From NCBI GenBank assembly GCA_020536535.1, contig JAHLWZ010000971.1:1-35507 (forward strand): a stretch of 35,507 nt of DNA, given 5' to 3'. This stretch comes from Pelomyxa schiedti (lineage: Eukaryota > Protista > Evosea). Positions 422 to 35,507 of this stretch are shown piece by piece. The stretch's first letter is position 1, and every line of letters starts with the position of its first letter. A model generated the notes under the pieces. The model was not told where the DNA came from and ran no database searches. It worked only from the letters and a program-made list of their open reading frames with translations. A program made the position numbers and the translations under genes.

Positions 422-732
422 ATGTGCCTGTCCCTTGTGGGAGTGATGGTACCATCTTTGAGTGCCCTTGTGGGTGACCAGTTTCATCCCACTCAAACAA
501 AGCAACAATCTTCTGCGTACACCTGGTATTATCTTGCAGTACAAGTTGGAGGATTGCCGACTGCCATTTTACTTCCGCTTTTGCTTGATGCCCTGCAACC
601 ATGGTGTGCCTTCATTACAGCTTTCGTGGTTTTTATGATCGTAGTAGGTAGGTAATGTTCAATGAATGAACATTGCTTACCAGCTATGGAAACGATGAGC
701 ATTGCTGTGCCTTCTGTGCCAAATAAACCTTA
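422..732 (+). pseudogene. Fragment of a POT/PTR (proton-dependent oligopeptide transporter, MFS) gene, about 3 TM helices
   Basis: ORF 422-655 reads VMVPSLSALVGDQFHPTQTKQQSSAYTWYYLAVQVGGLPTAILLPLL, matching the PTR2-family 'KPnvsafg-DQF...ffnwfYf.invG' region. A probable intron (~648-683, GT..ttaccag) leads to a stop at ~732. No upstream or downstream transporter helices are recognisable. Confidence 0.5.
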
Positions 733-2880
733 AAGGAGAATTAGTAAGTGAGAGGTGAAAATGAAAAACTCACACAACTGGCTGCAAATAACATGAGAGT
801 AGATAGTAGCAGAATGCTGCACCCCCACAGAGATAACACTCAAGTGACTTGCAAAAGTATCCGCAGAAGCACCGCCAATTAGACCCGATCCACACGTAAG
901 AGCCAGTCTATGTGCCTGGTGTATGTCCTTGGCAAGACCACCCACACCTTGGCTGTGATGGCATGCAAGGCGGTACATTGCATTAGCACTTCCGCCATCA
1001 GCGGCCCTCTGCAACAGTGTCACGGCCTTGCTTGCGTCCCTGTGATCACCATCGCCAATTTCATACCACAGACCAAGGTTGCACAGTGCGTCAGCGTCAC
1101 CAGCATCAGCAGCCCCCTGCCACAGTGTCACTGCCTTGTGGGTGTCCTGCTCAACCAATGCCATAGTAATAACATAAACTGAGACCAGTCGTTCCAGTAG
1201 CATCACCAGCGTCAGAAGCCCTCTGATAAAGTTTCGCTGCCTTGGCCTGCTCAGCACAATCATAATCACTGTAACCCAAAGCAAGGTTGCAAATTGCCGA
1301 AGTAAAACCAACATCAGCAGCCATCTGGTACAGTGTCACTGCCTTGCTGGTATCCAGGTCACCACAAACACCACGCTCCAAGCACACACCAAGGTTGAAC
1401 AGTGCCGCTGCATCACCAGCAGTAGCAGCCCTCTCCCACAGTGTCACTGCCTGCTACCATCACCTTTGCAATAACAGGAGCCAAGGTAGCGCATGGCCGT
1501 GACCTCACCGGCATCAACTGCCCTCTGGAACAGTGGAACTGCCTTGTGCACATCCTTTTTAACACCCCCAACACCGTTCCAGAAGCATACACCCAGATAC
1601 GTTACAGCAGACATACACCAGTTAATCTGACTGGCAGAACAAGTGGCCACGATGGAGGGATTGCTGCTGTGTTCATGAACACTTGATGATCCTGGGGCTG
1701 GAATCTTTGCACTCATTTCACCAAATATGTGTGCTGTGGATGATGAACATTGGCCATTTTGCAAGTTGTCTGAACCCCAGCAATACAAATTCCACAGAGC
1801 AACAAAGTACATGGACAACGACTGTTCTGCTGTTGTGGATGATGGTGGTTGTTGATGCTCCGTGTTTCCTCTCAATGATGCCGCTGACACGAGGTCAGTC
1901 CATTCTTGTTCTGAGGTTCGGCTCGCATAAGTCATCACACGCTTGCAATGTGTTCTCATTTCTCCTTGTGTGAAGGAGATGGCGCGAGAGAAAACCAGAG
2001 ACAGGCACGTTGGAATGCCACTGATGAAGTGATAATTTGTTGTTGGTCGGAGAAAACAAAGGAAAGATACACGGCACACGACACGATGGATACTGATCAT
2101 CTCAGATTCAAACAAGGAGGATGTGTTGGCAACAAGAGTGATTGCAGAGTCAATGTTTCCCACTTGCAACTCAAAAAGTGCCTCCATCATCATCTCGTTT
2201 CTTGTGTTGATCGGACTGTGTACGAATGCCATTCCTTGTTGGAATGTACCCTAGAAAGATCAATTTCTTCTTCACAAAATGCCTCTAAGTCAACAATCAA
2301 CCATGGATGTTCAAGAAAAATGAGGCACACCATATGGCTCACACACTCCTGCACATTGGTCACATCCCACAGGAGACTTTGAAACAACACAAGCAACAAT
2401 TCTTTTTCAAGATGAAAACAACCAAAACAGAAAAAAAGACAGACCACCTTGATGGGATCTTTGACATGGCCAGCATAAAGAGTTTTTCAGACTGAAGACC
2501 ACTGCTGTATAATGCAGAGCCATTATGTTTGTGGTTTTTGAGAAATGAGACACCCAGTGTCTTCTTTCAAAGGCTGCTGAAGTTCCTACTGGAAACCTCA
2601 GGCCAAAGGTGATTTGTCTAGCACTTGCTCCTCCCAAATACAACATCCATCCATGGTGCTGATCCAAGGGTGAAATGAGCTTGTATGTGGTGCAAATACA
2701 TACATTTTTGGTTGATGGTCATGCAAAAACCCTGTGAATGGAAATGTGAAAGAAGCTACATTGTGCTCCTTGGAATGCAATCTCAGGTGGAACTGTGCCC
2801 AGAAACATCTCCCAATTGATCAGAGTGCTGAAGAATCAATCCTCCATCTCACAACTGTTCTCTCAACCTGCAGACACACA
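730..2880 (-). pseudogene. Sel1-like repeat (SLR) protein, frameshifted
   Basis: ORFs 1444-2232, 1151-1447 and 730-1314 contain 36-aa SEL1 units (AVTYLGVCFWNGVGGVKKDVHKAVPLFQRAVDAG; ALFNLGVCLERGVCGDLDTSKAVTLYQMAADVG; ALCNLGLWYEIGDGDHRDASKAVTLLQRAADGG). The frame breaks at ~1447 and ~1153 without splice signals. The 5' part (2232-2880) is degenerate and its limit is uncertain. Confidence 0.8.
1017..1610 (-). repeat. ~108-nt tandem coding repeat (SEL1 units)
   Basis: The anchor gtgtcac(t/g)gcct occurs at 1017, 1125, 1333 and 1441, giving spacings of 108, 208 and 108 nt. Confidence 0.8.
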
Positions 2881-2958: not shown

Positions 2959-3965
2959 ATGTCGTCTGAACCTTGTTCCAGCGGGGCCTCTGTCTCTGCC
3001 GAGAGACCCCACACTACCACGCAACCACCACCGCAACAACCGGCGATAACCACAACAGCAACTACAAGAGGGCAGCAGCAAGGCAGGGACAAGGGCGGGG
3101 ACAGCCGAGCCGCCACCACCACCACCAACACCACGCACGACGGCAGCGAGGGAGAGGGAGCGGGATGGGAGCAGGAGTGCGGGGTGTGCTTGGGGGCGAT
3201 TGGGTGCCGCGGCACCCTGGACTGCTGCGACCACGCCTTTTGCTTCTTGTGCATCATGAGGTGGTCCCAGGTACGTGCCGTGCCGTGCCGCCTAGAAGTA
3301 GTGTTATTGGCAAATGCGTTGGTTTGTGTGTGCTCTAGTTTATATCGACGCCAACATATGTTACGTAATTTCTTAATTTTCAAAAAAAAAAAAAAAAGGA
3401 AAGCAACACTTGCCCTGTTTGTAAGGCTAGATTTGGGTCTGTTCTACGGCAGGTTCCTTTTTAGTTTTTCTTTCAAACTTTTTTTTTTTACATTTCAGGT
3501 TTTAACAACTGTTTCAGCCTGAAACTGCTGGAGAACCTACGGAAAATCTAGTGTTTCCAGTTGAGTTAAGAGACCAAAAGCCTGCCGTAATGACACTTGC
3601 TGAGTATTATTTGGTTATGGAGCCCAATGTATTGTTTGCGCTTCTTTTACCCTGAGTTCAAGGCTCACCCAGTTCAGCCTCCTGCCATTTCCCCTAGCGG
3701 ATGTCTTTTCCCAACCGCGCCACGAGATGAGGAGGAGCACTATGAAGGAAATGAAGAATTAGTATCGTTCTTGTGTGACCCTGACGATACCGAAGCTCTC
3801 TCTTTGTGCCCCAGTGCTCCGTCACATCTATCTGTTGTGGACTATTTGGATTCTCTGTCGCACTATTCCGAAGATGATGACGAAACCGACGCGACCAATA
3901 CAACAGAACTGCCTTCCACGCATTGGAGCTCGAGAACAGCAAAAATTCCAGAAATAAAGAGGTGA
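2959..3965 (+). CDS. C3HC4 RING-finger protein (putative E3 ubiquitin ligase), multi-exon
   Basis: Exon 1 ends CGVCLGAIGCRGTLDCCDHAFCFLCIMRWSQ|gtacgt (3271). Exon 2 (3399-3452) gives ESNTCPVCKARF, completing the RING. Further exons lie at ~3518-3628 and ~3663-3965 (acidic tail). The 3' end may splice onward to ~4056. Confidence 0.85.
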
Positions 3966-19065: not shown

Positions 19066-20249
19066 ATGTCAGGGAGCCGAGTTGGTGGGCACGTGACGGG
19101 TTTGCGGCTGAGGGTACGCCACAACAGCAGTGCGTTTGTCGTAGATCTGGACAGTGAGGCTTCGGTGGGTCTGTTGAAAGTGGTCATTGAAGAAAAGACA
19201 GGAATGTCGGCTAGAGATCAGTCCAGTGTGCCTTGTCCCTACCCCCTTTTTTTTTCCCTTTTTTTTTTTTTTTGTCTGCGGAACAACCACAAATTCGTGT
19301 TGCCTTATTTTCTAAGCGAATTTGTGACAAACTAGTTCTGTGTGGCTATCCACCAAAACCTCTGTTGGAACCTGATGGCAAGTTACTGATAGAATGCAAC
19401 ATTAGGGACAATGACCAAATCACTCTAACAAATAAATCAAGTCATGGCATAAAACAAGGATTCTCCTCGGAGCCCTATATCCCTCCAAGTAATTGATCCT
19501 CAACGGGTTTAAGTGGGGGAATGTAAGATGAAAATCTAACCAGGGAAGTGAATGACAGGAGTATTGTAGTTTGCCGTGAAGTTCCTGGCGACAACTCTTG
19601 CCTTTTCCATGCCGCAGCGTAAGTGAGTAAGATTCTTTTTTCCCCCACTAAAGACTTTGCTAGGTATGTACTAGAAGGCAGGCAACGGACCAGTGGGCCG
19701 TGCATGCCAATTCGAATAAAGATTGCCGAAGTTGTTGCTGCACACCCCCAAAAGTTCACTACAGATTACTTGGGAATGCCCAACACAGAGTACTGTTCAA
19801 GAATTCGAGACCCTGGATTTTGGGGAGGTTTTGATCACATAGTGCCAAAGCAAATTCTGACCAAAAGAATAGGTGCAATTGAGCTTTCTATTTTATCATT
19901 TTTGTTCAGTGTGGAAGTAATAGTTTTTGACCTAACCACGGGCAGTACTCCTTTATGCTATGGTGTAAATGAAGGATACACCCGGTTTTCAATGTTAATG
20001 TACACAGGTAACTTCAGTACAAGAGATGTAGACTAATTAATTATCCTTTTCAATCCAGGAAACCACTACGATGCTCTAGCTATGACCGCACTTTACGGAA
20101 GTCCAGAGAGTAATGACAAAGTAATTTTTGGAGTTTCTGACAAAAGCAAGGCAATGGCGAAGGTAAGAAAATTCAAAAAAATCCTTTCCTTATCCTGGCA
20201 GGTTTTGGATTTTCTCGTTTCAGAGAGAAAGAGGCGCATGGGCCATTGA
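19066..20249 (+). CDS. OTU1: OTU1/YOD1-like deubiquitinase (N-terminal ubiquitin-like domain plus OTU domain), multi-exon
   Basis: UBL region LRLRVRH..VIEEKTG..VLCGYPPKPL. Catalytic REVPGDNSCLFHA (~19575-19615), WGG|AIELSILS and MYTG|NHYDAL. Ends VLDFLVSERKRRMGH* at 20249. No C-terminal C2H2 finger seen. Confidence 0.88.
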
Positions 20250-20361: not shown

Positions 20362-21952
20362 TTACACTTCCTTACGCAGCCATTGCTGGCTTGTGGCAGT
20401 CGAACATGTCTGCTGCAACAGCTGACTACCCTCAGTAGTGGACTCACCACTCACATCCAAGCACATTCCACTGTGTGAAGCAATGAGCTGGTAGTAATTG
20501 CTACCAGCAGAGACCATCTTCCACATTTGGTTACTTGCACCAGAGCAGGTGTACTGTATGACCTTTGCCCCAGCCTGTGTGGATGCATCACTCACATCCA
20601 TGCATTTGCCACTGTTCTGATTCACAATGGAATAGTAATTCTGGTCCTGTGTGGTGGTGAATTCCCACTTTTGATTTGCACCTCCATCCAGTTCCCACTG
20701 TATCACGTTTGCACCATCACTTGTTGACGCACCATTGACATCAGCTACATACCCACTCTTGGAGTTTGTCAAAGTGTAGTACTGCGGGAGAACGCCGTCG
20801 GCCCATAAGCCTGTGTCCGTGTCTATTGTCCAGCTCTCGTAGCAGAGCATGGAGACCGTCGTCCCTTGAATTGTCAGGGGTTCCCAGACATAGCGAGAAT
20901 TCGCGAGGTCGGTGGAAACCCACCTGTCTCCCAGGAACATGTAGGTGGTGGACATAGTGCCGGTTATGGGAAGGATGAACGTGACCTGTGAGTTGCAGGT
21001 GTTTGTGCCAGAAGGCGCGAAGCTGGACCAAGAGGACCAGGGCCCAGAAATCGACGAAGCGGTGGAGTACTGGTTGTCATTGGTGCTCCAGCCAGTCAGA
21101 TGGGATCCAAACATGAAGTAGGTCCCTAGCATTCAGCAGTTAGTTCAATAAAATTCGACGTTGTTAATGCTAAATGTAAACTGTGGGTGTAGATAAGTCA
21201 ATAATAGAAACCGAATTAAAAAGTTGATGGCACGAGGTTCGGCACGCACCATCCTTCTTTAGAAGAGCAGGTGCCTCGTACTGGTTAAGCGACACCACCA
21301 AGGACTCTATTGTCAAGTAGTCCCAAGACAGGGCATACACCTGCAGCCTAGCCTCGGTCCTGTCCTCGCTCACAAAGTACGCCGCCGCGCCCCCGCCCTC
21401 GCCCTCGCCGTCGTCGTCCCTCCACAGCGTGCAGTCCAGGCTGTCGTGCGTCCCCAGCGGCTTCACGCTCCCGAGGTACGTGTAGTTGCCGCAGACCGTG
21501 GCGCACGTGGCGACGCCGGCGCGCCGCTCGCTGTAGCTGCTGTCGTCGACGTGCATCCACAGCACCCACGTCGCCGTCGCGTTGTTGTAGGCCACGTGGG
21601 GCCGCTCCACCACGCGGTCGGGGCCCAGGTCGCCCTGCGACTGCCTGGTCAGCACGTGGTTGACAAAGTCCCAGCGCCGCAGGTCCGTCGACGAGTAGCA
21701 GTTGATGTTCTGGAACGCGCTGCCGTATGTCTTGTCCTCGCCCAGCCAGTACCACGTCGTAGTCGTAGTCGCGGCGGCTGAAGACGACGAGGGGGGGGGC
21801 ACTTGGACTACGACTCCTTCTCCGTGGGCCTGGATGAGCACGTCGTTGGTGTCATACCATGGCGACCCTGGCATAATCTCGACGGGCGTCGAGTGCACGA
21901 CGACAGCTAATGCCCACAAGGAGCAAACAACACACAACGGCACCGGGGTCAT
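20362..21952 (-). CDS. Secreted GH43 subfamily 24 exo-beta-1,3-galactanase-like enzyme with C-terminal ricin-B (CBM13) lectin domain, 2 exons
   Basis: Signal peptide MTPVPLCVVCSLWALAVVVHS. GH43_24 motifs IQAHG, WYWLGEDK, VVERPHV, WVLWMHVD, YFVSEDR, EAPAL, NSQVTFILP and FLGDRW. Three QxW repeats (ANQKW, SNQMW, SQQW) with CMDV/CLDV. One intron at ~21129-21248 joins KKD|GTYFMF. Confidence 0.9.
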
Positions 21953-22179
21953 TCGAGGTCGAAGCGGTTTCAATAATTTGGGGGAAAATTTGCCCCATCT
22001 CGCCACAACCAACAAAAAAACCCAACCACAGGTAAATGATCTATCAAGAGGAGGCGATACTATCAAGAGGAGTGGTGCTGTGAAGCACACAGCTGAGTAG
22101 AGTGACATTGTAAAATGCATCTATTTAGCAGATCTCCAAAAATAAAAAATAAAAAAGGGTGAACAACTGGGTGTGACAC

Positions 22180-24282
22180 ATGGATCCGGACGACACGGCG
22201 TGGTCAGATCCTACTAGTACGACGTCTAGTGCTTCGGCTGTTATCACGCCCACATTGGCGTTTTCTGAAGTGCCACCATCTATGGAGACGTCTACAGTAA
22301 TTCCTGCTGCAACTTGCTTGACGTCGTCGTCGTCATCATCGGTGCATAAAAATGAGGGTCCTAGGTTGTTGAATTACAGTGCCTTCAATTCACTTGCCAA
22401 ATCCAGTGCTAGTGCTGTGGCTGGTGCTGCCGGCTGGTGTTGCAGTATCGAGTTCCTTCCGTATTCGCTTCTCTTTAACCTGTGGGTAAGGTATTGCTCA
22501 AAGGGCTTATGGCGGTGGCAAAGGACTGTTGGGGCTTGATACTTTGAAGGTAAAGAACCGGAGAGATAGTGGATGTTCTCTGACTCTCTCTCTGTAGGTG
22601 AATAAGCGAAATGAAGGTGACGACAAAGAAGAATGGAATAAAGAACAACAGACAAGCTTGTGGCAGCGCCTATCGTCTCTTATTGGTAATCGAATGGAGC
22701 AAGGCAAAGTTTTACATACCTTTTCACGATTTTCTTCAGGAAAGGACATAGTTAGCCTTATTTCACTTCCGATATGGGTTTTTGAGCCCACATCATTCTT
22801 GCAAACAATGGCGGAACCACTTCAATACAGTGCCCTTCTGGATAAGGTTGATGTGTTTTGTATTTCCTTTTGGAACTCAGCCGTTATTCAGGCAGTGGAA
22901 TGTGAATGTGTACATGAAAAGCTTGCATACATAACAGCGTGGGTAACTGCAATGTACTCTCTTGCTGTTCGCACAAGTATAACTCTCCTTGGTGTTATTC
23001 TTGACTGATAATTTGATAAAGGGAAACCCTTCAACCCTCTCCTGGGTGAGACTTTCGAGGTAATTGCCAAAGATGGCTCTTATCGCTTTTTGGCAGAGCA
23101 GGTCTCTCAACCGTTATTCGTTTCCTTTTTCTCAATAGCCTTGCAGGTCAGTCATCACCCTCCGATATCGGTGAGTACCTTGATGCTTTTCTCGATTCTT
23201 CAACCTTAAAACAGGTAGCAAAAGTGTGGGCAGAGAAATGGTGGCTCGTTTTGGAGCTTCATGTTTGTACAAAATTCTATGGAAACTCACTCGAGGTCAC
23301 AATTGAAGGAACGAACCATTTCCAAGATCTGCAGTCAGGAACTCATTTCACATGGGGCCATCTGAGGTAAAACATTTACTTTCTTTTGCCTCCACTTATT
23401 CTCGCAAAGCACCACTGCCCACAATTTGCTTCTTGGTTCAGTTTGGGTAGACCACTGGGGAGACCTAACAGTTAGGTCCTCTACTGGTGATTATGCCAAT
23501 GTTCGTTTTGAGAAGACTGGTTGGATGTCCGCTGGTAAGATTTCAATTCTTTGACACAGCAATCTGACTTATTATCAGGAAGATATCAAGTTTCTGGAGG
23601 AATATTCGATGCCAGCAACGTGAAAGAAATGGAGCTCAGTGGGAAATGGAATGAGTCGCTCTGGGCACACAGGGTTCATCGTAACGACTCAGGACGAGAC
23701 TGCGTGCACGATACACTTTTGTGGGCTTTTGTTCCAGAGCCTGTGCACCCCAAGTAGGTTTTCATTTGTGAACAAACTCTCTCACCCTTGATAGATTCAA
23801 GATCAACAAGTTCGTTCAACAAAACCTTCTTGGTATTAGTTTTAATGTTGGCTAACCAAGTCTAACATGCCTCAAGCCATTACGGCCGAGCAACGAGCTG
23901 TCCTACCCCCACTGACAGCCGTCTCAGGCCAGATCGCTTACAGTTGGAGTTAGGAAACACAGAAGAAGCAGCAATGCATAAAGTAAAGATGGAGGATATG
24001 CAAAGGACAGAAGAGAGGGCCAGGCGAGAAAGTGGCAACAAGTGGATACCTGCTCATTTCGAGGTTTGTCCAAACGGTCTCTACGTTCTTTCTCACGGTT
24101 GTGTTGTCAACAGAAAACTGCCTACGGTACAGACGGACACGTTTGGGTTCGTAGTATCCCCTATCTCTTGTTGTCGGTTTTGATCTGATCGACTCCTTAA
24201 CCAAAAGGAACTTTGCTCGGCCTACTGGGAAGAGAGGGACAAAAGAGAGGCTGCCTACACAGAAGAAAAGCATAGTCCGTAG
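22180..24282 (+). CDS. Oxysterol-binding protein (short ORP, ORD domain only), multi-exon
   Basis: ISLPIWVFEPTSFLQ, KPFNPLLGETFE (~23024-23059), EQ|VSHHPP signature, LSGKWNE, LPPTDSRLRPD, K..MEDMQR, and a final exon ELCSAYWEERDKR..* ending at 24282. Confidence 0.92.
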
Positions 24283-24607: not shown

Positions 24608-27600
24608 TCAGGGTCTCTGGGACAAGGAGGATAACATGGTATCAGGTGGTGGTTGTTGTTGAACTTGTTGTATTTGTACTGGTGGATATTGTGGTGGTTG
24701 TAGAGGTAGGGGTTGTGGTTGTTGTTGATGGACTTGTTGTTGGTGTTGTTGGACTTGTTGTGGTAGTGGTAGTGGTGTCTGCGGTGAGGGTGGGGCATCT
24801 TGGGAGTTCTTCCTTCTCCTTGCGGTTCTTGGTTGCTTGGGTGGCCTCTCTGGAAGTGGTTTTCGTCGAACATATGGTCTCTTGGTTCTTTTTGGTGGCT
24901 GGGAGTCTGTTTGTTGCTGCGGTTGCTGCTGTGGCTGCAGCTGTTGTTGTGCAACTATGGGTGATGGTGCAAGTTGGTGAGGGGAGGTTGCCGGAATTAG
25001 TGCTATTTGCTGTGCCGGTACTTGTGATTGAGTGAGCTGTGGTGGTATATTGGAAGGGGCTGCAACTGCACCTGTTTGTGAAGGGGCCAGTTGAGACAGT
25101 TGAGACAGTTGAGACGGTTGGGTGGAAGTTTGGCTTGATTCAGCTACTTGCGGAGTTTCTTGACTTGTGGAACTAACCCTCCGCTTTCTGGGTCTTCCCC
25201 TTGCGGGTTTTGACTTGGCAACATTTCCATCCTGATGATTCTAATTTACCAATATAAAAGTGCATAACTGTTGTACCTCGCCTTTGTCATTGCTTGTAGG
25301 CGTTGAGGAAATTTCAGAACCCACAGATTCAAGGTCATCCTCAATGTCATCAAGTGTCAGTAATGATCTCTCACACTCTCGTCCAACAAAATTTCGTGGC
25401 AATACTGTCTTTATTTTTGTTGGAATTTAGGTGTAGTTTAAACAGTAGGAATATGATACCATTTTCCTTCTCACTTTGTGCTGGTATGACTCTAACTCTG
25501 GGTCGGGACTAATGGCTTTCCACCTCCGCCAGCACTGCAACCAACCAAATTAAAGAAGAAAAGGAAGGCGTCAATTACCCACCTGGTTATCAGTCCTGCA
25601 AGGAATTTTGCTTGCTATTAGGGACCATTTTTCTCCATATTTATGATACAGATCAAGTAGCATTTTATCTTCCTGAGGGAGGTAATGTGTCACTATGTAT
25701 CACAGGAGGAAGGAAAATTAAATACCTCTGGTGTCCAAACACTGGAGAGAATAAGAGAGGGGTCAAGGACATTCTTCCATCGTTCTCTGCACTTAACATC
25801 CGATCTGTTGGGCACATGATGTGCAATCTTAGCCCATCTTTTTGGTCCATAATAGTGTGACGCTATCATCAGCCTCTGAGAAGAAAATTTAATGTCGAAA
25901 TAGTTATTAATTGGGGTGTAACTATGTCTTCTTCATCATTCCAGTGCCCTTGTTTGAGGCTCGGTTTCAGGGATTTCAGCCACCTGTGTAGGCATTGCTG
26001 CCCATTCCGTCCAGGCAACAAGCTTGCAACTTTTTTGTTTTGTTTTGTTTTGTGAGAGATGCAAAGTAGATATCAAAAAATATTACCTCTTTGCCAGTCT
26101 TTCTCTCCATAAGTAGCAACAGACCGTTTAAGTATTTCATCCTCTGCTGCGGTCCACTTGCTTTGTTCTAAGTGAGACCTTTTGTTTTTTATAGTGGGAC
26201 ATGCCTGTGCAATGACTGGGAATTGAGACTTCGTTGGTACCTTGCCAGACATTGATAAGCCTGGCGACCGCCCTGTTTGGAATTTGAATTCTAAGAGAAA
26301 AACTTCATTGGCTTCGGCACTCACACCCAACTCGGCTGCGATTAGATCCCAGTCATGTGCATTGTATTTTTTGGCCAGCTGTAGCAGTCGTATATCCTCT
26401 TCCTTTGTGAAGGGGTTTTTGTTAATGGTTGGAGACTGAACATTCATCCAGCGGCGTTTGCATTCTGCAACACTGTGTGATGGAACCTAGAATATATGAA
26501 ATTTTTTTCCTGGTTTCTTCACTTACAGCTGACTGTACTTCATTCCAGTCAAACTTTGGATGTATGCAAGAAAGTAGCTTTTCATCTGGAATATTTCGAA
26601 GAGCTAGGAGCTCCAAGTTCCATCTTGCAGACTCCTCTGGGGTGGTACCCTCCCCAATGTTATACCTGTGAGAGAATTATTTTATGAGTGCACTTGTTTC
26701 ACAGACTTGGTGTAGGTGATCTCTTCTGTCATCAGAGTCAATTGCTGTTTCCTTGTTTTATTGAGTGGACATGAGAAACAGGGTATAAAACAAACTTTAC
26801 AGCAGTGTAAAGTAGTGCGGAATCCTTTTCACCCCCTGTGAGAGCCATTATCAGTGTAAGTAAGTTGTGGGAAAAGTTGTTACATTGAGCAATTGACTCG
26901 GGTGTTGGTACTTGATTTGCTGCTTGGTGAATTGCGTCGAGGTTTGGTGGAGGTTCCTAAAAGGAAATTGAATCCTTCACTTCAAGTAGTCAATAAGGAC
27001 CTTTCCAAGCTTGTCTAAAAAGTAGGACCTACCAGGTATGTGCGTTGATCTATGTACATTGGCAGCAGCAATCTTCTTGTTGGCAGTTCGCAACTTATCC
27101 ACACGTTCCTTTCAGTAGTTTTTAGCATTTTTAATTTGTCTTTCTCATTCTGGGCGGCTTACATAGAGTGTTTCACACTCACTGAGGGCATAGTGCAGAG
27201 TAGTGGCAGTTTTCATTAGCATTTCCTGGTGCAGTAAGATCACTTCAATGTAAAACTCTATTGCTTTCGCTCACAGCAACGTACATACATAATATTTGTG
27301 AGCTTGCTTTGAGAGAGCCTCCAAAACTGGGTCCACATGTAACTCATTCTCACGCTTTGTAATCACTAAGGAAGTGGAAAGAGGAGAAGTAATTCCACTG
27401 GAGGGCGTGAAAGGAGTTGGCGGGTTGGTATTGTCTGCCATCACAGAGGTTTGAACATCGAAAGTGGCTGCTAAATTACAAGATTGTTGAAGATTTTCCA
27501 GTCTCCTTGCCGAGGAAGAGTTTTGTGTACCACCACTAAGCAACGAGGAGCACTCAGAATGTTGTGTTGGGCTCACTGCATCACTCAAGTAAGAGGAGCC

Positions 27601-29856: not shown

Positions 29857-30312
29857 TCACTTGCAGTGGAGTTTTTCATCAAATATCTGCAGGTATGTCC
29901 AGGCAGGTGGGACCACACCATAAACCACAAATCTAAAGACTGTCCACACCCCAAAAGAGAAACAAATAGCATGGACCGTTTCCAAGACGAGCCCAATCAA
30001 GCGCAACTCTCTCAAAAAGAAAAAGTGAGGTCTATTGACGAGAGCGAAACCCCGGCAAAAAGGAAACAAAAAATGGACGAGGGTAGGATACCTTTCAGGG
30101 AGTAACGACGTATACTGGTACTCTGGCCCTGCCTGCTATTGATTGTCCCTTGGCGCTTGCCCCAATACAACTCCATCCCACCTGTGCACGAGTACTACAA
30201 CACCGGAGTCAGTTGTCGTGGTGGGATGCGTGATTGTGATTATGGGTATAGTTGCACGAGATATACCTTGGGCGACTTGTCTTGCCTGCGGTTGTTCTGC
30301 GGCGACGTGCAT
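29857..30312 (-). CDS. Possible small (~95 aa) 3-exon hydrophobic protein
   Basis: Can be spliced with GT-AG introns as MHVAAEQPQARQVAQ|GGMELYWGKRQ..RRYSLK|ELRLIGLVLETVHAICFSFGVWTVFRFVVYGVV..HCK*. No homology recognised. Confidence 0.3.
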
Positions 30313-30543
30313 GGCTTGTTGAGTCGCAGTGGTGTGCAGGTTTTCAAATATAAAGTGTCAAAAATTACTAATCTCAAACTACAGATACAGTTAAATGCCA
30401 AACGACCTTAGTTTAAAATGCAGCCCCAACAGGGACATTAGTGGTCCCACTTACACAAAGAACTCATAACACCAAAACACCCTCTTTTAAAAAAAATAGG
30501 TCTTCCTAGAAATAGAATCCCTGAAATTTCAGCCAAATCCCTC

Positions 30544-33500
30544 CTACAGGAGAGGTTGTGCAATGAAAATGTGCTCGTGTGTGGGTGTAAAGAAGTCCTT
30601 CTGGCTGTGTAGGATGGAGAATTTTTCGGAAACCAATAGTTGTTGCACAGCATCTAACGGCAAGTACAAAAGGTGGTCCACCTGTTTGTTAACGTTAGAA
30701 GAAATGTGATGTAATAAAAAGTTGAGGAACCTTGTAGGGCAAGTCTCGCAGTGCTGCTCTGTACACAGGGACCCTGAGAAGGAGAACTCCAGGCGGCTTA
30801 CCTGTGGATGGTTGTGGCAACAGAATTTGCCGTACGTTTCGAAGGTATTCTCTGGGAGTGCTCACATGCTCCAAGACATCGAACATTGTGACAATGTATG
30901 GTTGCTCAAGGTTGTGTGTGCTCAATACGGCGGATGGAGAATCCCAGAATTGTGTATGAAATATGAGTGGCACTGGAGGTGTTCCAGATAAATTTGCTAA
31001 AAGTCCTTGTGATTGTTCAACGGCATGCATGGAACAGTCAATTCCATAAGCTTTCCAGCCGGCTTTGTAAGCGGCCATTATGTTGGCACCAAATCCCGAG
31101 CCCAAATCAAGAAGTGCCGCATTTGTCACTGTTTTAGGGTTTGGCAACCCACTTTTCTGGAGGCACTCATTTAGAAGATCCATGAAAAGCCTTCCGTTTT
31201 CAATTCTTGAGAGCTGCTGTTCAGGATAGTTACAATATCCACAAATAGAGCTGAATTCATTGCAAAAATAGGTTTCACTTTGGTATAGGGCATCATACAG
31301 TCCTGGCAGAGAAAAGGTGTTGAAGCAAGTGTTACACTGTTTGCATAAGCATAATTTTCTTGCTTCAGCCAGAGCCACGAAGTCAGAGGGTGACAAAATC
31401 ACCTTGGATGAACTTGTCTTTGGAGGTAGTGATGTGAAGTTTGTTTGGCATCGTGGTTGTTGGTCAACCTCCAAGTCACTGACTTGTTGAGAGGCACATA
31501 CAGGACACTCCACGAGAATTGGGAATTGATTTAAACCAGTGGATTCTGTCTTTATTAAGGCACGTAATGCTTCTGGTATCACAACTTCACTCATGTATTG
31601 AAGACAGCTACTCTTTATGAACCTAAACCTGACCTTGTATGTTGAGCATGTGAACATTCCTGGGGTATGTCACTCAGACCAACTGTATGGAGAAAATACC
31701 TTTACAAATCGTGTGGTCACATATTGCCGGAATTGATTGCATGCTAGGAGAGCAAGGGCATGAATCACTCACGGGTACTCCCTCAGCTTGAAGCAGTGTT
31801 TGTATCACAGAGCTCAGAAACAATAATCCCTTTGCAGGCATTGATACAAATCCAGAGTGAGTTCCTGTGTGATGAGCCTTGAAAGCCATTTCGTTTGCTT
31901 TCCAACGGCTGCATACACATTCGTGTAGTTCTCTCATAGGATCGCATAGTCTCACATTAATGGGACACTTCAAGTTTGGTTTTCCTTCAATTACAGAGAT
32001 ATCTTCCAGATCTACCTGCTCACTCTGCAACATGGAGAATTTGTCTCCGAACTGCAAAAGATTAGTACTTGGCAGGGTAAACACTAAAACCTGTGTGTAC
32101 ATCTGTGGAGTAACGTGAACACAAGCACCTAAGCAAGAATAGGTTGCTGCTCTCCAGCAACTATAGGCAAGAGTTTCTTTTGTTTCCCAAGGAGAGAAGA
32201 AAAGAAGATCCATAGCCGGATTGATTCCAATTGACAAACAGCAATCCAATGCTGAAGCACGTTAGTCTAGCCTACATAATGGCAAATTACTCACCCACTA
32301 AATTGGTTTTCTCTGTCGTGTCCTTGCACATCCCGTTGAGTACAGAGTCGCAGAATGACTCTATGCCAAGAGTAATCTGAACGAATCCTGCTTTGTTCAA
32401 TCTGCTCAGAACAGTGGGGGAAACTGTGTCTGCCCGTGCTTTGCACGTTTTTGGTATTTTGGTTAGTCCCGCTTTGATAATTTCATCACAGATTTCAGTT
32501 GCCACTTCGACATCCACAAGAAAATCATTATCACTCACATGAACACAATCAAATGTTGAATTTGATGGGCCCATGGCATTTTGTATAGCTGATATGATAC
32601 TTGCAACAGGTGTAGGAACTGTCTGATCACGAGGGGCACTGCAAAATACACACCTTCCCCTGCATTTATCACTCACTTTCACATAGAGTTTATGTACACC
32701 TGTGCCACATGGGTAAGGTGAAACTGTTTGTTGCCTTCTGCTGTTGTCAACTTCTTTGTAGCAGGTAGTATTGACTACGTCTTGAGAACTGGTGGTATAG
32801 GCAATTCCTGCCCCAATTTCGTCTGCATTTACGGTCATAAATTGAAAAGCAGAGGATGCGGTTGCTATATATTTGCATGAGTCATCCAGCACTCGGATGA
32901 ACAGATTGGGCAAAGAGGATAATTTACGGAACAGTGTAAATTTCCATGATTGGAAGCGAGCCCAAGGCTCTACTTCGGTTCTGTGTTGTAACAAAAAGGA
33001 TGCTATCTGATGAAGAATGGCTTCCCCTGGCCCTGCCACATAGATATCAAATGGAAGTGATTCAAATAACTTTGCGTGAGGGTAATGACTGATATTCAGC
33101 CCCCCACAAACCAGTAGAGCATCAGGGAGAGTCTTATACACTTCCATTATGAGTGGGGCATCGTTTCTCAATGTTTGTGGAATAAAGCTGAAACCTACGA
33201 CGTCATAGTCAGCCCTTGAGAGTACAATTTTCAGAGATTCAGCTGGGTGATCACAGAGATTTGGATTGAACACACGACAATCTACAAAGTCGGTGTCATG
33301 TGTCATATAGTGACGGAGTTGTTCCAAACCCTATAAGTTGTGTAAGGAGGATGCCAAAAGGGAAATAAGAGGGTACCCAATGAGGAGCTACAAATGGAAG
33401 TGTGGAAGCTCCCCCTTGAGCGGTACCACAGGGAGCAATAAGAAGAATTCTAATGAACTGATTACGGTGCCTTACAGGCACAGAAGGGACTTTATTAGCA

Positions 33501-35302
33501 ACATCCTCAAAACTTCCACACGTCCCATCCAAACAGGACTTCAAAAAGGTAGTCAAAGCCTCCTTCCCAACAGTTCCACAGTGGGGTAACATTACATCTT
33601 GCAGGGGATGCATCGTCCGACCAATCCAGTGGCATACATTGGGGGGAACAGGTAAAGTTAAATTTCCACATGTGAATTTCCACTTGCCCCGGTCAAAAGT
33701 GAAGATTACATTGCCGGTTTTTGCACCATAAAGTGAATCAATAGCATTGCTGAAGTCACATGACAGAGAAGAATTTAGTTCTGGAAGAGGATTCATCATG
33801 GTAGATGGAGAGTGAAAGCGTTCAATGAGGGAGAAAACGAGATCTGTCAAACTGGTGGTTGTCAAGGTTGGATGGTTGATATTCAAAAGCTATCTTGTGT
33901 AAAAATTCGATAATTAAAGTCAATTTTGGCACCTTGAGGCAGGCAATGAATAGAGCCAAACCATTTACACCTATACTTCGGTCAACTATACCCAAAGGCC
34001 ATCTTGGGTCATGGGTGAACCCTTCGAGGATAGACTCAAAACATGGGACCAAGTCAGTTGCCACAGAGTTTCTTATCTCAACGTTCTACTTGGGATGAGA
34101 AAGAGGAGTAATGTATTCTCAGCATGCCATTGGGAGAATGTGTGAAGAATGTTGAAGTACAATATTGGCTGGCCCTTGAATAGTCTCGTTCACAATGGGC
34201 CACCCTTTTTCCTTGGCGAGATCGACGAGGGGACTGCCTTTGCCAGAATGAGTTGACTACATAATGTACAAAGTACCTGCATAAAGCTCTAGAAAAGGGA
34301 AACTGTTGAGAGCCAGTCGGGACCCTGTTTCTAAGGCTACATGCAGCAATTCCACTGACCGTTCAATTGTTTCCAATAGAGCCTGGATTCACAAGTAGGT
34401 ACAAAATTGAGCGCAATTGGCATACCTCTACAGTGACAGTAGGGTGGAAAAGAATGAGGTTGATGTTTGTAATTGGAACACCAACTGACAAGCTGGCTTT
34501 CACAGAATCAAAAGCTTGTTTCCCAGTGAATCCTTTCTTGAGTTCAGGTGACATCAAGCTTGCATCAGAAAATGATTCTACTCCAAATGATAAAACTCGC
34601 AACCCAGCCTTAACTCCAAGATCGAGGACCTCTGGATTCACACAGGAAACGCGTGTCTGGCCTATAAGCATGAGGTTTCCTGGTACAGTTCCTGCCTGCT
34701 TCGCCCTTTTAAGTAATGTTATTTCAGATTTGTATCTATTGCTATAAAACCTGATAAGGGCAGAAAAAAGGTTGCTGGCTCTTGTTGGAGAAAGAAGGAA
34801 GTCATCATCATTGAAATAGACTGCTGAAGATTCACTTGTTATCGAGCAGATCAGTTGCGCAATTTCTTCGGGGTCGAGAGAATGAGGAGCAGTATAAAAT
34901 TGCCATCCAAATCTCTGGGCTTAAACCCGTTAATGAAGAAAGAACAGGATTTAATAGTTACCAGTGCAAAATGTGCATCTATGAGGGCAAAAGCTTGTGG
35001 TGTATAAACGAACTGTGTGAACAAACTCTGATGTAGGGGAGAGTACGCTCTCAGCCAGACGCCAGTAAAGCCTATATGGAATCTCGGCGCCACTGTATTT
35101 AGCGAGACTGAGGAATTCTTCCTTGGAAATCTATCACAGAGTGAGTACAGAATCATACACTGTGGATTCAACTGAACATCTTCGAAGAGAGTCTTCAATT
35201 TCAACAGGTGCAGCATTGCGCAGAATAACTCCTGGGATTGACACGAGAGGAGCAGTTAGCCCATTTTGCAGTATAGATGTGATCATGTCACACATCACGG
35301 GT
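30544..35302 (-). CDS. Multidomain fusion: B12-binding-type radical SAM + second B12-binding radical SAM + zinc-ribbon class I SAM methyltransferase (5' end truncated), about 10 introns
   Basis: RS1: GEPVM..IPGVILRN, VRLYTTSFCPHRCTFC (34966-34989), YFNDDDF, QTRV, LSFGVESFS, ELYA|GSPL. RS2: RILLIAP..PHW|GLEQL, DVVGFSF, LLVCGG, DIYVAGPGE, SDKCRGRCVFC, SDNDF, LGIESFCD. MTase: CPVC..CKQC, LLDLGSGFG, YGIDCS, TMFDVLEHV, ending QPLL* at 30544. The introns keep one reading frame throughout. Confidence 0.85.
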
Positions 35303-35386
35303 TCGCCAAGGAAAAAGGGTGGCCCATTGTGAACGAGACTATTCAAGGGCCAGCCAATATTGTACTTCAACATTCTTCACACATTC
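35303..35386. repeat. 84-nt perfect inverted copy of 34136-34219
   Basis: tcgccaaggaaaaagggtggcc...cacacattc is the exact reverse complement of gaatgtgtg...ccttggcga at 34136-34219. Confidence 0.95.
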
Positions 35387-35507
35387 ACCCAAAGGCCATC
35401 TTGGGTCATGGGTGAACCCTTCGAGGATAGACTCAAAACATGGGACCAAGTCAGTTGCCACAGAGTTTCTTATCTCAACGTTCTACTTGGGATGAGAAAG
35501 AGGAGTA
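35387..35507. repeat. 121-nt perfect direct copy of 33990-34110, running to the window end
   Basis: acccaaaggccatcttgggtc...gaaagaggagta is identical at both positions. Confidence 0.95.

What the first reader, a model, noticed from the sequence alone, without database searches (positions are those of the whole stretch)
30544..35302. Spliced eukaryotic megaenzyme: two cobalamin-type radical SAM modules fused to a methyltransferase
Seen: the ORF track shows disconnected pieces. Removing short introns (e.g. 34238-34276, 34086-34127, 33890-33932, 33331-33376, 32252-32294, 31660-31699) gives one continuous frame of roughly 1,400 aa. It holds RS1 (CPHRCTFC, absent from the ORF track), a linker, a B12-binding domain plus RS2 (CRGRCVFC), and a class I MTase. 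Established: B12-binding radical SAM enzymes (class B methylases and relatives such as HpnP, BchE, Fom3) are essentially prokaryotic, oxygen-sensitive and usually single-module. Inference: a bacterial three-gene tailoring operon was acquired, fused into one polypeptide and intronised, forming a small multi-step methylation or radical-chemistry assembly line in a probably anaerobic protist. It would imply an unrecognised B12-dependent pathway. The substrate cannot be read from the sequence.
Basis: partly seen in the sequence, partly recalled or inferred. Interest (0 to 1): 0.9.

Follow-up and report, generated by a model that had tools for sequence, protein, structure and literature searches.

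The report
Amoeba's bacterial double B12 radical enzyme
The oxygen-shunning amoeba Pelomyxa schiedti carries an intact, spliced and transcribed gene for one large protein made of two bacterial-type vitamin-B12/iron-sulfur radical enzymes plus a methyltransferase, apparently taken over ready-fused from bacteria and shared with other anaerobic protists, which points to an undescribed B12-dependent pathway whose product is unknown.

Summary
Real gene, longer than reported. The genome is Pelomyxa schiedti and the contig end (35312-35507) is a chimera. The true 5' part lies on contig C874 and adds a second B12-binding domain. Full model: about 1,570 aa, 16 introns, B12-RS1-(OxsB-like domain)-B12-RS2-Zn-ribbon methyltransferase. 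RNA confirms four introns; a Mastigella transcript carries RS1 to MTase in one ORF. Both CxxxCxxC motifs are intact, and the module-2 model matches OxsB and TsrM (Z about 20). The two modules were already fused in bacteria: Ca. Omnitrophota proteins have MTase-B12-RS1-B12-RS2 in one ORF (about 35% identity over 1,200 aa), and one bacterial contig has the split three-gene operon beside a GT8 glycosyltransferase. Trees of both modules join Pelomyxidae with the metamonad Paratrimastix, next to these bacteria. The C-terminal MTase is probably a replacement. No curated family cut-off is met. Best guess: sequential radical tailoring, then methylation, of a sugar or sugar-nucleotide; substrate unproven. 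NCBI annotates a 5'-truncated model (KAH3743680.1); I found no paper on it. The scan already noted a separate single-module B12 radical SAM family in this genome.

The parts
30544..35311 (-). Window part of the gene (aa ~153-1569), 13 exons: 35311-35173, 35130-34962, 34919-34751, 34705-34426, 34382-34277, 34237-34128, 34085-33933, 33889-33377, 33330-32295, 32251-32091, 32051-31700, 31659-30731, 30681-30544. The first ~153 aa (B12-binding domain 1, 4 introns) lie on contig C874 (L002:738-1419, + strand)
35312..35507 (.). Chimeric contig end, not part of the gene: inverted copy of 34126-34219 joined to a direct copy of 33990-34110
   Evidence: 98% and 100% repeats; runs X1 and X2 leave the window at 35311
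35173..35311 (-). End of B12-binding domain 1 (GLGE motif) and linker to RS1
33933..35030 (-). Radical SAM domain 1 and its C-terminal part; CPHRCTFC at 34989-34966; YFNDDD, GQTRV, FGVESF and LYAG motifs conserved with orthologs
33490..33770 (-). N-terminal accessory domain of module 2 (approximate bounds); superposes on the N-terminal domain of OxsB
   Evidence: AF2 model; OxsB aligns model residues 7-626, TsrM and TokK only from about 115
33000..33457 (-). B12-binding (class 1 Rossmann) domain 2
   Evidence: PF02310; five-strand Rossmann in the model; TokK and TsrM sequence hits
31750..32720 (-). Radical SAM domain 2 with C-terminal helices; CRGRCVFC at 32664-32641
   Evidence: PF04055
30547..31520 (-). 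Class I SAM methyltransferase (Methyltransf_23) with N-terminal Zn-ribbon (CPVC near 31507, CKQC near 31345), DLGSGFG near 31108, DVLEH near 30880
34086..34127 (-). GC-AG intron, 42 nt, RNA-confirmed (the NCBI model uses an earlier GT donor and loses 11 aa)
32052..32090 (-). In-frame 39-nt intron, RNA-confirmed, same position in the ortholog L020
34238..34276 (-). 39-nt intron with an in-frame stop; retained in the one RNA contig that spans it, but at the same position in the ortholog and needed for the conserved YAG motif

Best explanation
A functional nuclear gene of Pelomyxa schiedti for a three-site tailoring enzyme of about 1,570 aa. SHOWN: the architecture B12-RS1-(OxsB-like domain)-B12-RS2-Zn-ribbon MTase; splicing and transcription of parts; conservation in Mastigella, another intron-rich eukaryote and, without the MTase, Paratrimastix. 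Modules 1 and 2 are two old, distinct subfamilies that travel together as a cassette, and the closest kin are already-fused Omnitrophota proteins. INFERRED from family knowledge: each RS domain binds a [4Fe-4S] cluster, cleaves SAM to the 5'-deoxyadenosyl radical and abstracts an H atom, while the neighbouring Rossmann domain holds base-off cobalamin. INFERRED, weakly: the two modules act one after the other on a single small substrate, most likely a sugar or sugar-nucleotide unit. At least one adds a methyl to an unactivated carbon through methylcobalamin, and the class I MTase then O-methylates the product, for example for a surface or cyst glycan. The tandem arrived fused from an Omnitrophota-related anaerobe, gained introns separately in Archamoebae and Preaxostyla, and in Pelomyxidae had its N-terminal MTase replaced by a C-terminal one. 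Confidence is about 0.9 for anatomy and bacterial origin, about 0.4 for the sugar substrate.
For: Continuous frame and motifs. RNA joints. Mastigella Trinity ORF of 1,391 aa spanning RS1 to MTase, 42% identical. L020 ortholog about 50% identical with 10 of its 11 introns shared. 7 of 9 SNPs against runs X1/X2 are synonymous. Omnitrophota fusions L028, L059 and P0005 and the split operon L027: MTase, RS1, RS2, GT8. Matching trees for both modules. Fold. Sugar hints: GT8 next to L027; module-2 relatives fused to UDPGP and RmlD/epimerase or named RpiB and WbqC; GT5 neighbour; GHMP kinase, PHP, aldo-keto reductase and carbamoyltransferase around P0025; a Zn-ribbon MTase relative beside GT2 and PMT_2. 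The host has B12-dependent methionine synthase (PMC8887013; L009).
Against: No biochemistry. Omnitrophota long proteins are mosaics of many enzyme domains (10.64898/2026.06.07.730766), so their sugar domains are weak evidence. Several neighbourhoods are uninformative (gyrA, LexA, restriction genes, phage tail). Neither module has TokK's Trp76 or the Cys-X3-Cys-X2-Cys-X-Trp motif of iterative methylases (PMC9204698). The best PDB sequence hit of module 2 is the non-methylase OxsB. No P. schiedti RNA record spans the whole gene, and one intron is retained in the only contig across it.
Confidence: 0.5

Rival explanations
1. Module 2 works like OxsB/AlsB: cobalamin-assisted radical rearrangement (for example ring contraction) of a nucleotide, with module 1 as the partner RS enzyme (as AlsA partners AlsB) and the MTase finishing a modified nucleoside, possibly a defence or antiviral molecule.
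For: OxsB alone aligns over the whole module including its N-terminal domain (Z 19.7, 496 aligned) and is the top PDB sequence hit (E 4.8e-15). Albucidin needs two RS enzymes (PMC13331322). L029 joins module 1 to an MTase, a dCMP-deaminase-like domain, HD and HAD; relatives carry NUDIX and GHMP domains.
Against: Only 13-14% identity and rmsd 5.5 to OxsB; TsrM and AprD4 score the same Z. The position aligned with OxsB Asn186 is Val or Ile in both modules. No HD-domain OxsA partner in the cassette loci L027, L028, L059 or L022.
Confidence: 0.22
2. The enzyme methylates or remodels membrane lipids (hopanoid- or sterol-surrogate, ether or branched lipids), an adaptation to life without oxygen.
For: Weak matches to HpnJ, HpnR and the ladderane-cluster family (E 1e-15 to 1e-9); the bacterial cassette MTase weakly matches CMAS.
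Against: All scores are about a tenth of the cut-offs (for example 55 against 578 bits); no lipid genes beside any cassette locus examined.
Confidence: 0.13
3. One module is a non-radical, TsrM-like methylase or only a structural partner, so the protein has fewer active steps than its domains suggest.
For: Module 1 has an invariant Arg in the loop after strand 3 (GFSPVR), the loop that carries TsrM Arg69 (PMC13331322). The C1083 paralog keeps module 1 but has lost RS2 and the MTase; Paratrimastix lacks the MTase.
Against: Both cysteine triads and the SAM-binding motifs are conserved in every member. The Arg register against TsrM was not checked structurally.
Confidence: 0.12
4. Contamination, mis-assembly or a decaying pseudogene.
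For: Single-cell amplified assembly with chimeric ends on both C971 and C874; one retained intron in RNA.
Against: 16 spliceosomal introns, 4 RNA-confirmed; eukaryotic-type neighbours on the contig; two other runs give the same sequence over 30200-35311; orthologs with shared introns; mostly synonymous SNPs.
Confidence: 0.03

Closest known systems
OxsB / AlsB (cobalamin-dependent radical SAM ring-contraction enzymes; PDB 5UL2-4)
   Same: Module 2 has the same order: N-terminal accessory domain, class 1 B12 Rossmann domain, RS barrel, helical C-terminus. Z 19.7 over model residues 7-626; best PDB sequence hit. AlsB also works with a second RS enzyme.
   Different: 13-14% identity; Asn186 position is hydrophobic here; no OxsA-like HD partner; fused to a second B12/RS module and an MTase.
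TsrM, TokK, CysS, MgmA/QCMT (class B cobalamin radical SAM methylases)
   Same: B12 Rossmann domain plus CxxxCxxC barrel; Foldseek E 1e-19 to 1e-13, Z 16-20.
   Different: Single-module prokaryotic enzymes without the N-terminal domain; TokK's Trp76 and the CxxxCxxC-x-W signature are absent here; identity 10-17%.
Uncharacterised Ca. Omnitrophota MTase-B12-RS-B12-RS proteins (MBU4313012.1 / L028, L059, P0005) and split operon L027
   Same: Orthologous module 1 and module 2, in the same order, with the same linker; about 35% identity over 1,200 aa; one well supported clade in both trees.
   Different: No introns; MTase is N-terminal and lacks the Zn ribbon; often embedded in long multi-domain proteins.
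KAH3743680.1 (P. schiedti 'B12-binding radical SAM domain protein'), Mastigella eilhardi EP01105_P028581, Paratrimastix pyriformis KAJ4460428.1
   Same: The first is this gene; the others are orthologs with the tandem.
   Different: The NCBI model lacks the first ~160 aa (B12 domain 1) and 11 aa at a GC-AG intron. The Mastigella ORF also begins after B12 domain 1. Paratrimastix has no MTase and shares 0 of 8 intron positions.
PhpK-like single-module B12 radical SAM family of P. schiedti (earlier scan findings)
   Same: Same superfamily, same host, also bacterial in type.
   Different: Separate family: about 12 other contigs match TIGR04479, and none of them was found by searches with this gene's exons.

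Membership tests
Class 1 cobalamin-dependent radical SAM enzymes | CX3CX-aromatic-C [4Fe-4S] motif in a partial TIM barrel | tested here: met
   CPHRCTFC and CRGRCVFC, conserved in all orthologs; PF04055 87.8 bits with two stretches on KAH3743680.1
Class 1 cobalamin-dependent radical SAM enzymes | Five-strand Rossmann B12-binding domain N-terminal to the RS domain | tested here: met
   Module 2: AF2 model and Z 16-20 to TsrM, OxsB, TokK. Module 1: profile match to the module-2 domain, probability 99.7%; not folded. PF02310 stays below its cut-off in Pelomyxa and passes it in orthologs P0007 and P0174
Class 1 cobalamin-dependent radical SAM enzymes | Binds cobalamin base-off and needs it for turnover | not testable with these tools
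   needs reconstitution
TokK/ThnK/CysS-type iterative radical methylases | Trp at the lower face of Cbl (TokK W76) and Cys-X3-Cys-X2-Cys-X-Trp | tested here: not met
   Aligned position is Leu (module 1) or Gln/His/Val/Ile (module 2); residues after the triads are TA and SA (PMC9204698)
OxsB/AlsB | [quoted passage not shown] | tested here: met
   OxsB aligns model residues 7-626, about 80 residues more than TsrM; the N-terminal domain was not folded and searched alone
OxsB/AlsB | Asn186 water-mediated lower ligand; OxsA or AlsA partner; close sequence similarity | tested here: not met
   Ile or Leu at the aligned position, 13-14% identity, no HD partner in cassette loci
BchE, HpnJ, HpnR, PhpK, MgmA, ladderane B12-RS (NCBIfam) | Curated family score cut-off | tested here: not met
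   Best 59.5 against 481 bits (BchE); all far below
Class I SAM methyltransferase, Methyltransf_23 with Zn ribbon | DxGxGxG motif I, DVLEH motif, N-terminal CPxC...CxxC | tested here: met
   PF13489 38.1 bits, above the cut-off of 27; cysteines invariant in three orthologs and present in nearly all 16 bacterial relatives
MTase of the bacterial cassette (L027, L028, L059, P0005, P0185) | Descends from the cassette's own MTase | tested here: inconclusive
   Cassette MTases lack the cysteines, score 13-34 bits against 36-72 for Zn-ribbon relatives and form their own clade, but the AU test does not reject a union (p 0.29)

The most novel reading that the evidence does not exclude
Several unrelated anaerobic protists (Archamoebae, Preaxostyla and probably a third lineage) each kept a two-module cobalamin/radical SAM cassette from Omnitrophota-related bacteria to make a natural product not known from eukaryotes, such as an oxetanocin-like rearranged and methylated nucleoside or a C-methylated sugar, used in defence or in managing their prokaryotic partners.
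Probability: 0.25. Interest if true: 0.85.

Novelty: new variant of a known kind. Interest (0 to 1): 0.63.

Why it matters
The reviews of cobalamin-dependent radical SAM enzymes that I searched (PMC9204698, PMC12931638, PMC13331322) never mention eukaryotes, and three literature searches for eukaryotic members found nothing. This is a conserved, expressed, two-module member in free-living anaerobic protists of two supergroups. It extends B12 use in eukaryotes beyond the textbook enzymes and offers a self-contained cassette that can be expressed and assayed. It also ties a cargo of Omnitrophota long proteins to gene transfer into eukaryotes, and gives new examples of the OxsB N-terminal domain, whose function is unknown. 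The limits: the substrate is unknown, the superfamily is well known, the fusion predates eukaryotes, and the host has about a dozen other B12 radical SAM genes.

Tried and rejected
Fusion made in the eukaryote: rejected, since Omnitrophota ORFs are already fused. Module 2 as a recent duplicate of module 1: rejected; they are 20-25% identical and each has its own bacterial orthologs. Start at 35302 with a B12-less RS1: rejected (chimeric end; C874). A 30-nt first intron (35160-35131): replaced by 35172-35131 on ortholog and NCBI evidence. Viral origin: one scan of viral contigs found nothing. The first metagenome scan found nothing because its patterns were too specific. A word-based search with exon 8 gave only two hits. 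The Atlas searches gave only generic B12/RS clusters. An 89-row mixture-model tree did not finish, so the trees use LG+G4 on each module. A single origin of all eukaryote-like copies is rejected for module 1 (AU p 0.019). No curated family fits. My joined model was not sent to any search or folding tool; searches used single exons by reference or stored proteins by id.
Full report
Verdict. It encodes two complete B12-binding/radical SAM (RS) modules and a C-terminal methyltransferase (MTase). The tandem came from bacteria already fused. The substrate is unknown.

Host. The assembly has 52,367,397 bases in 5,337 contigs, matching the single-cell genome of the anaerobic amoeba Pelomyxa schiedti (52.4 Mb, 5,337 scaffolds, 1.59% GC-AG introns, B12-dependent methionine synthase; PMC8887013). 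The best database hit is this gene's own annotation, KAH3743680.1, on a 35,507-base contig.

Observation. All six named introns are at the stated coordinates. With four more, the minus strand reads 1,446 codons without a stop, ending at 30546-30544. Exon-by-exon Pfam scans find RS in two places, a weak B12-binding hit and Methyltransf_23 above its cut-off. The single RNA contig across 34238-34276 is unspliced there, although that intron holds a stop, interrupts the conserved YAG motif and sits at the same place in an ortholog. I read this as partial processing, but it is unresolved. No P. schiedti RNA record spans the whole gene, and the runs come from the same study as the assembly.

The missing 5' end. 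Positions 35312-35507 are an inverted and a direct copy of internal sequence. Runs X1 and X2 follow the window to 35311 and then continue with letters found near the end of contig C874. That stretch, with four short introns, encodes a B12-binding domain whose motifs match the orthologs (profile match to domain 2, probability 99.7%). The full model is about 1,570 aa with 16 introns, 15 of them 39-60 nt and one 79 nt: B12-1, RS1, accessory domain, B12-2, RS2, Zn-ribbon MTase. It was not sent to any search or folding tool; those used single exons by reference or stored proteins by id.

Function is conserved. A Mastigella eilhardi transcript ORF of 1,391 aa runs from RS1 to the MTase at 42% identity, which is the best evidence for one polypeptide; it too begins after B12-1. 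A metagenome contig (L020) has the whole architecture at about 50% identity and shares 10 of its 11 introns. Paratrimastix pyriformis has B12-RS1-B12-RS2 without an MTase and shares 0 of 8 introns. Seven of nine SNPs against runs X1/X2 are synonymous. A paralog on C1083 keeps module 1 only.

Fold. AlphaFold2 on module 2 gives pLDDT 91.5 and pTM 0.92. Its best matches are TsrM, OxsB, AprD4, CysS, MgmA and TokK (E 1e-19 to 1e-13, Z 16-20). [quoted passage not shown] OxsB is also the top PDB sequence hit (E 4.8e-15), at only 13-14% identity. No NCBIfam family comes near its cut-off.

Origin. The closest prokaryotic relatives are Ca. Omnitrophota proteins with MTase-B12-RS1-B12-RS2 in one ORF, about 35% identical over 1,200 aa (L028, L059, P0005; only L028 and L029 carry the name, the other two are assigned by resemblance). 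One contig has the split form: MTase, RS1, RS2, GT8 glycosyltransferase (L027). Trees of each module agree. Pelomyxidae plus Paratrimastix form a clade (100/99 and 98/96) inside a cassette clade with these bacteria. A second, probably eukaryotic pair (P0185, L026) sits apart, and a union of all eukaryote-like copies is rejected for module 1 (AU p 0.019). These are LG+G4 trees with some compositional bias, and the direction of transfer rests on the many prokaryotic relatives surrounding a few eukaryotic ones. The Pelomyxidae MTase carries a CPxC...CxxC Zn ribbon that the bacterial cassette MTases lack, and it scores better against unrelated bacterial Zn-ribbon MTases, so it is probably a replacement, though the AU test is inconclusive (p 0.29). 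An MTase thus accompanies the pair in most lineages, in different positions.

Mechanism. From family knowledge, each RS domain should cleave SAM at a [4Fe-4S] cluster to make the 5'-deoxyadenosyl radical next to base-off cobalamin. The residue under the corrin helps set the chemistry: Trp76 in the radical methylase TokK, Arg69 in non-radical TsrM, Asn186 in the ring-contracting OxsB (PMC13331322, PMC12931638). By sequence alignment alone, both modules have hydrophobic residues at the Asn186 position, neither has TokK's Trp, and module 1 has an invariant Arg in the same loop. This mildly favours methylation and does not decide it. Context leans to carbohydrates: GT8, UDPGP, RmlD/epimerase, RpiB, WbqC, GT5, and a GHMP kinase/PHP/reductase/carbamoyltransferase cluster occur beside or fused to relatives, and RS domains fall in the sugar-metabolism module of Omnitrophota long proteins (10.64898/2026.06.07.730766). 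I therefore favour two sequential radical steps and an O-methylation on a sugar or sugar-nucleotide (about 0.4-0.5). An OxsB/AlsB-like nucleoside rearrangement is the main rival (about 0.2), then lipid tailoring and a partly non-radical enzyme.

Novelty. The superfamily is well known and NCBI annotates a truncated model. The reviews read never mention eukaryotes, and searches for eukaryotic members found no paper. The scan had noted a separate single-module PhpK-like family in this genome; I confirmed about a dozen such loci. What is new here is the two-module cassette, its Omnitrophota link, its OxsB-like domain, and its retention in anaerobic protists of two supergroups. I class it as a new variant of a known kind, interest 0.63.

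Noticed in passing
G000:C874:63680-63882 (L002:1420-1621): The end of contig C874 is chimeric too (inverted copy of L002:1181 onward plus 121 nt of window 33969-34089). The gene is split over two contigs by this mis-assembly, which is why the NCBI model lacks its first B12 domain.
   Followed up: yes
G000:C1083, L014:5650-8740 (- strand); P0073: Spliced paralog of about 40% identity: B12-RS1-linker-degenerate second B12 domain, with no RS2 or MTase; it arose inside Pelomyxidae.
   Followed up: partly
L140:2544-7562 (P0185) and L026 (P0006): A second pair of cassette copies that look eukaryotic (an actin-fragmin-kinase-like neighbour; a TCA microsatellite upstream). P0185 is intronless with the bacterial MTase-first order; the pair groups with Omnitrophota, not with Pelomyxa. 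Hosts not identified.
   Followed up: partly
L020:7357-12436 (ERR12015701): Intron-rich ortholog from an unidentified eukaryote in a metagenome; three of its introns appear to be GC-AG.
   Followed up: partly
G000 contigs C966, C870, C252, C475, C589, C562, C423, C173, C694, C160, C526, C798: About a dozen loci match the PhpK-like B12 radical SAM model TIGR04479 below its cut-off: a second, expanded family in the same genome.
   Followed up: partly
window 20362-22120 (- strand): Glycosyl hydrolase family 43 domain (E 1.7e-9) followed by a ricin-B-type lectin domain (E 6e-59), probably one spliced secreted glycosidase.
   Followed up: partly
window 19623-20036 (+ strand): OTU-like cysteine protease fragment (E 1.6e-5).
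   Followed up: no
window 730-2232 (-), 2959-3522 (+), 22598-23008 (+), 26073-26447 (-): By eye only: Sel1-like repeats (172-nt duplication), a RING-finger protein, an oxysterol-binding-protein-like piece and Myb-like repeats; ordinary eukaryotic neighbours.
   Followed up: no
L009 (G000:C3680): By eye, a spliced fragment of B12-dependent methionine synthase, consistent with cobalamin use by the host.
   Followed up: no
P0018, P0045, P0048: Metagenomic proteins of 1,800-2,300 aa with four radical SAM motifs in tandem; a separate multi-module family, not examined.
   Followed up: no
L029:1-10206: Omnitrophota long protein joining module 1 to a second RS domain, an MTase, a dCMP-deaminase-like domain, HD and HAD.
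   Followed up: partly
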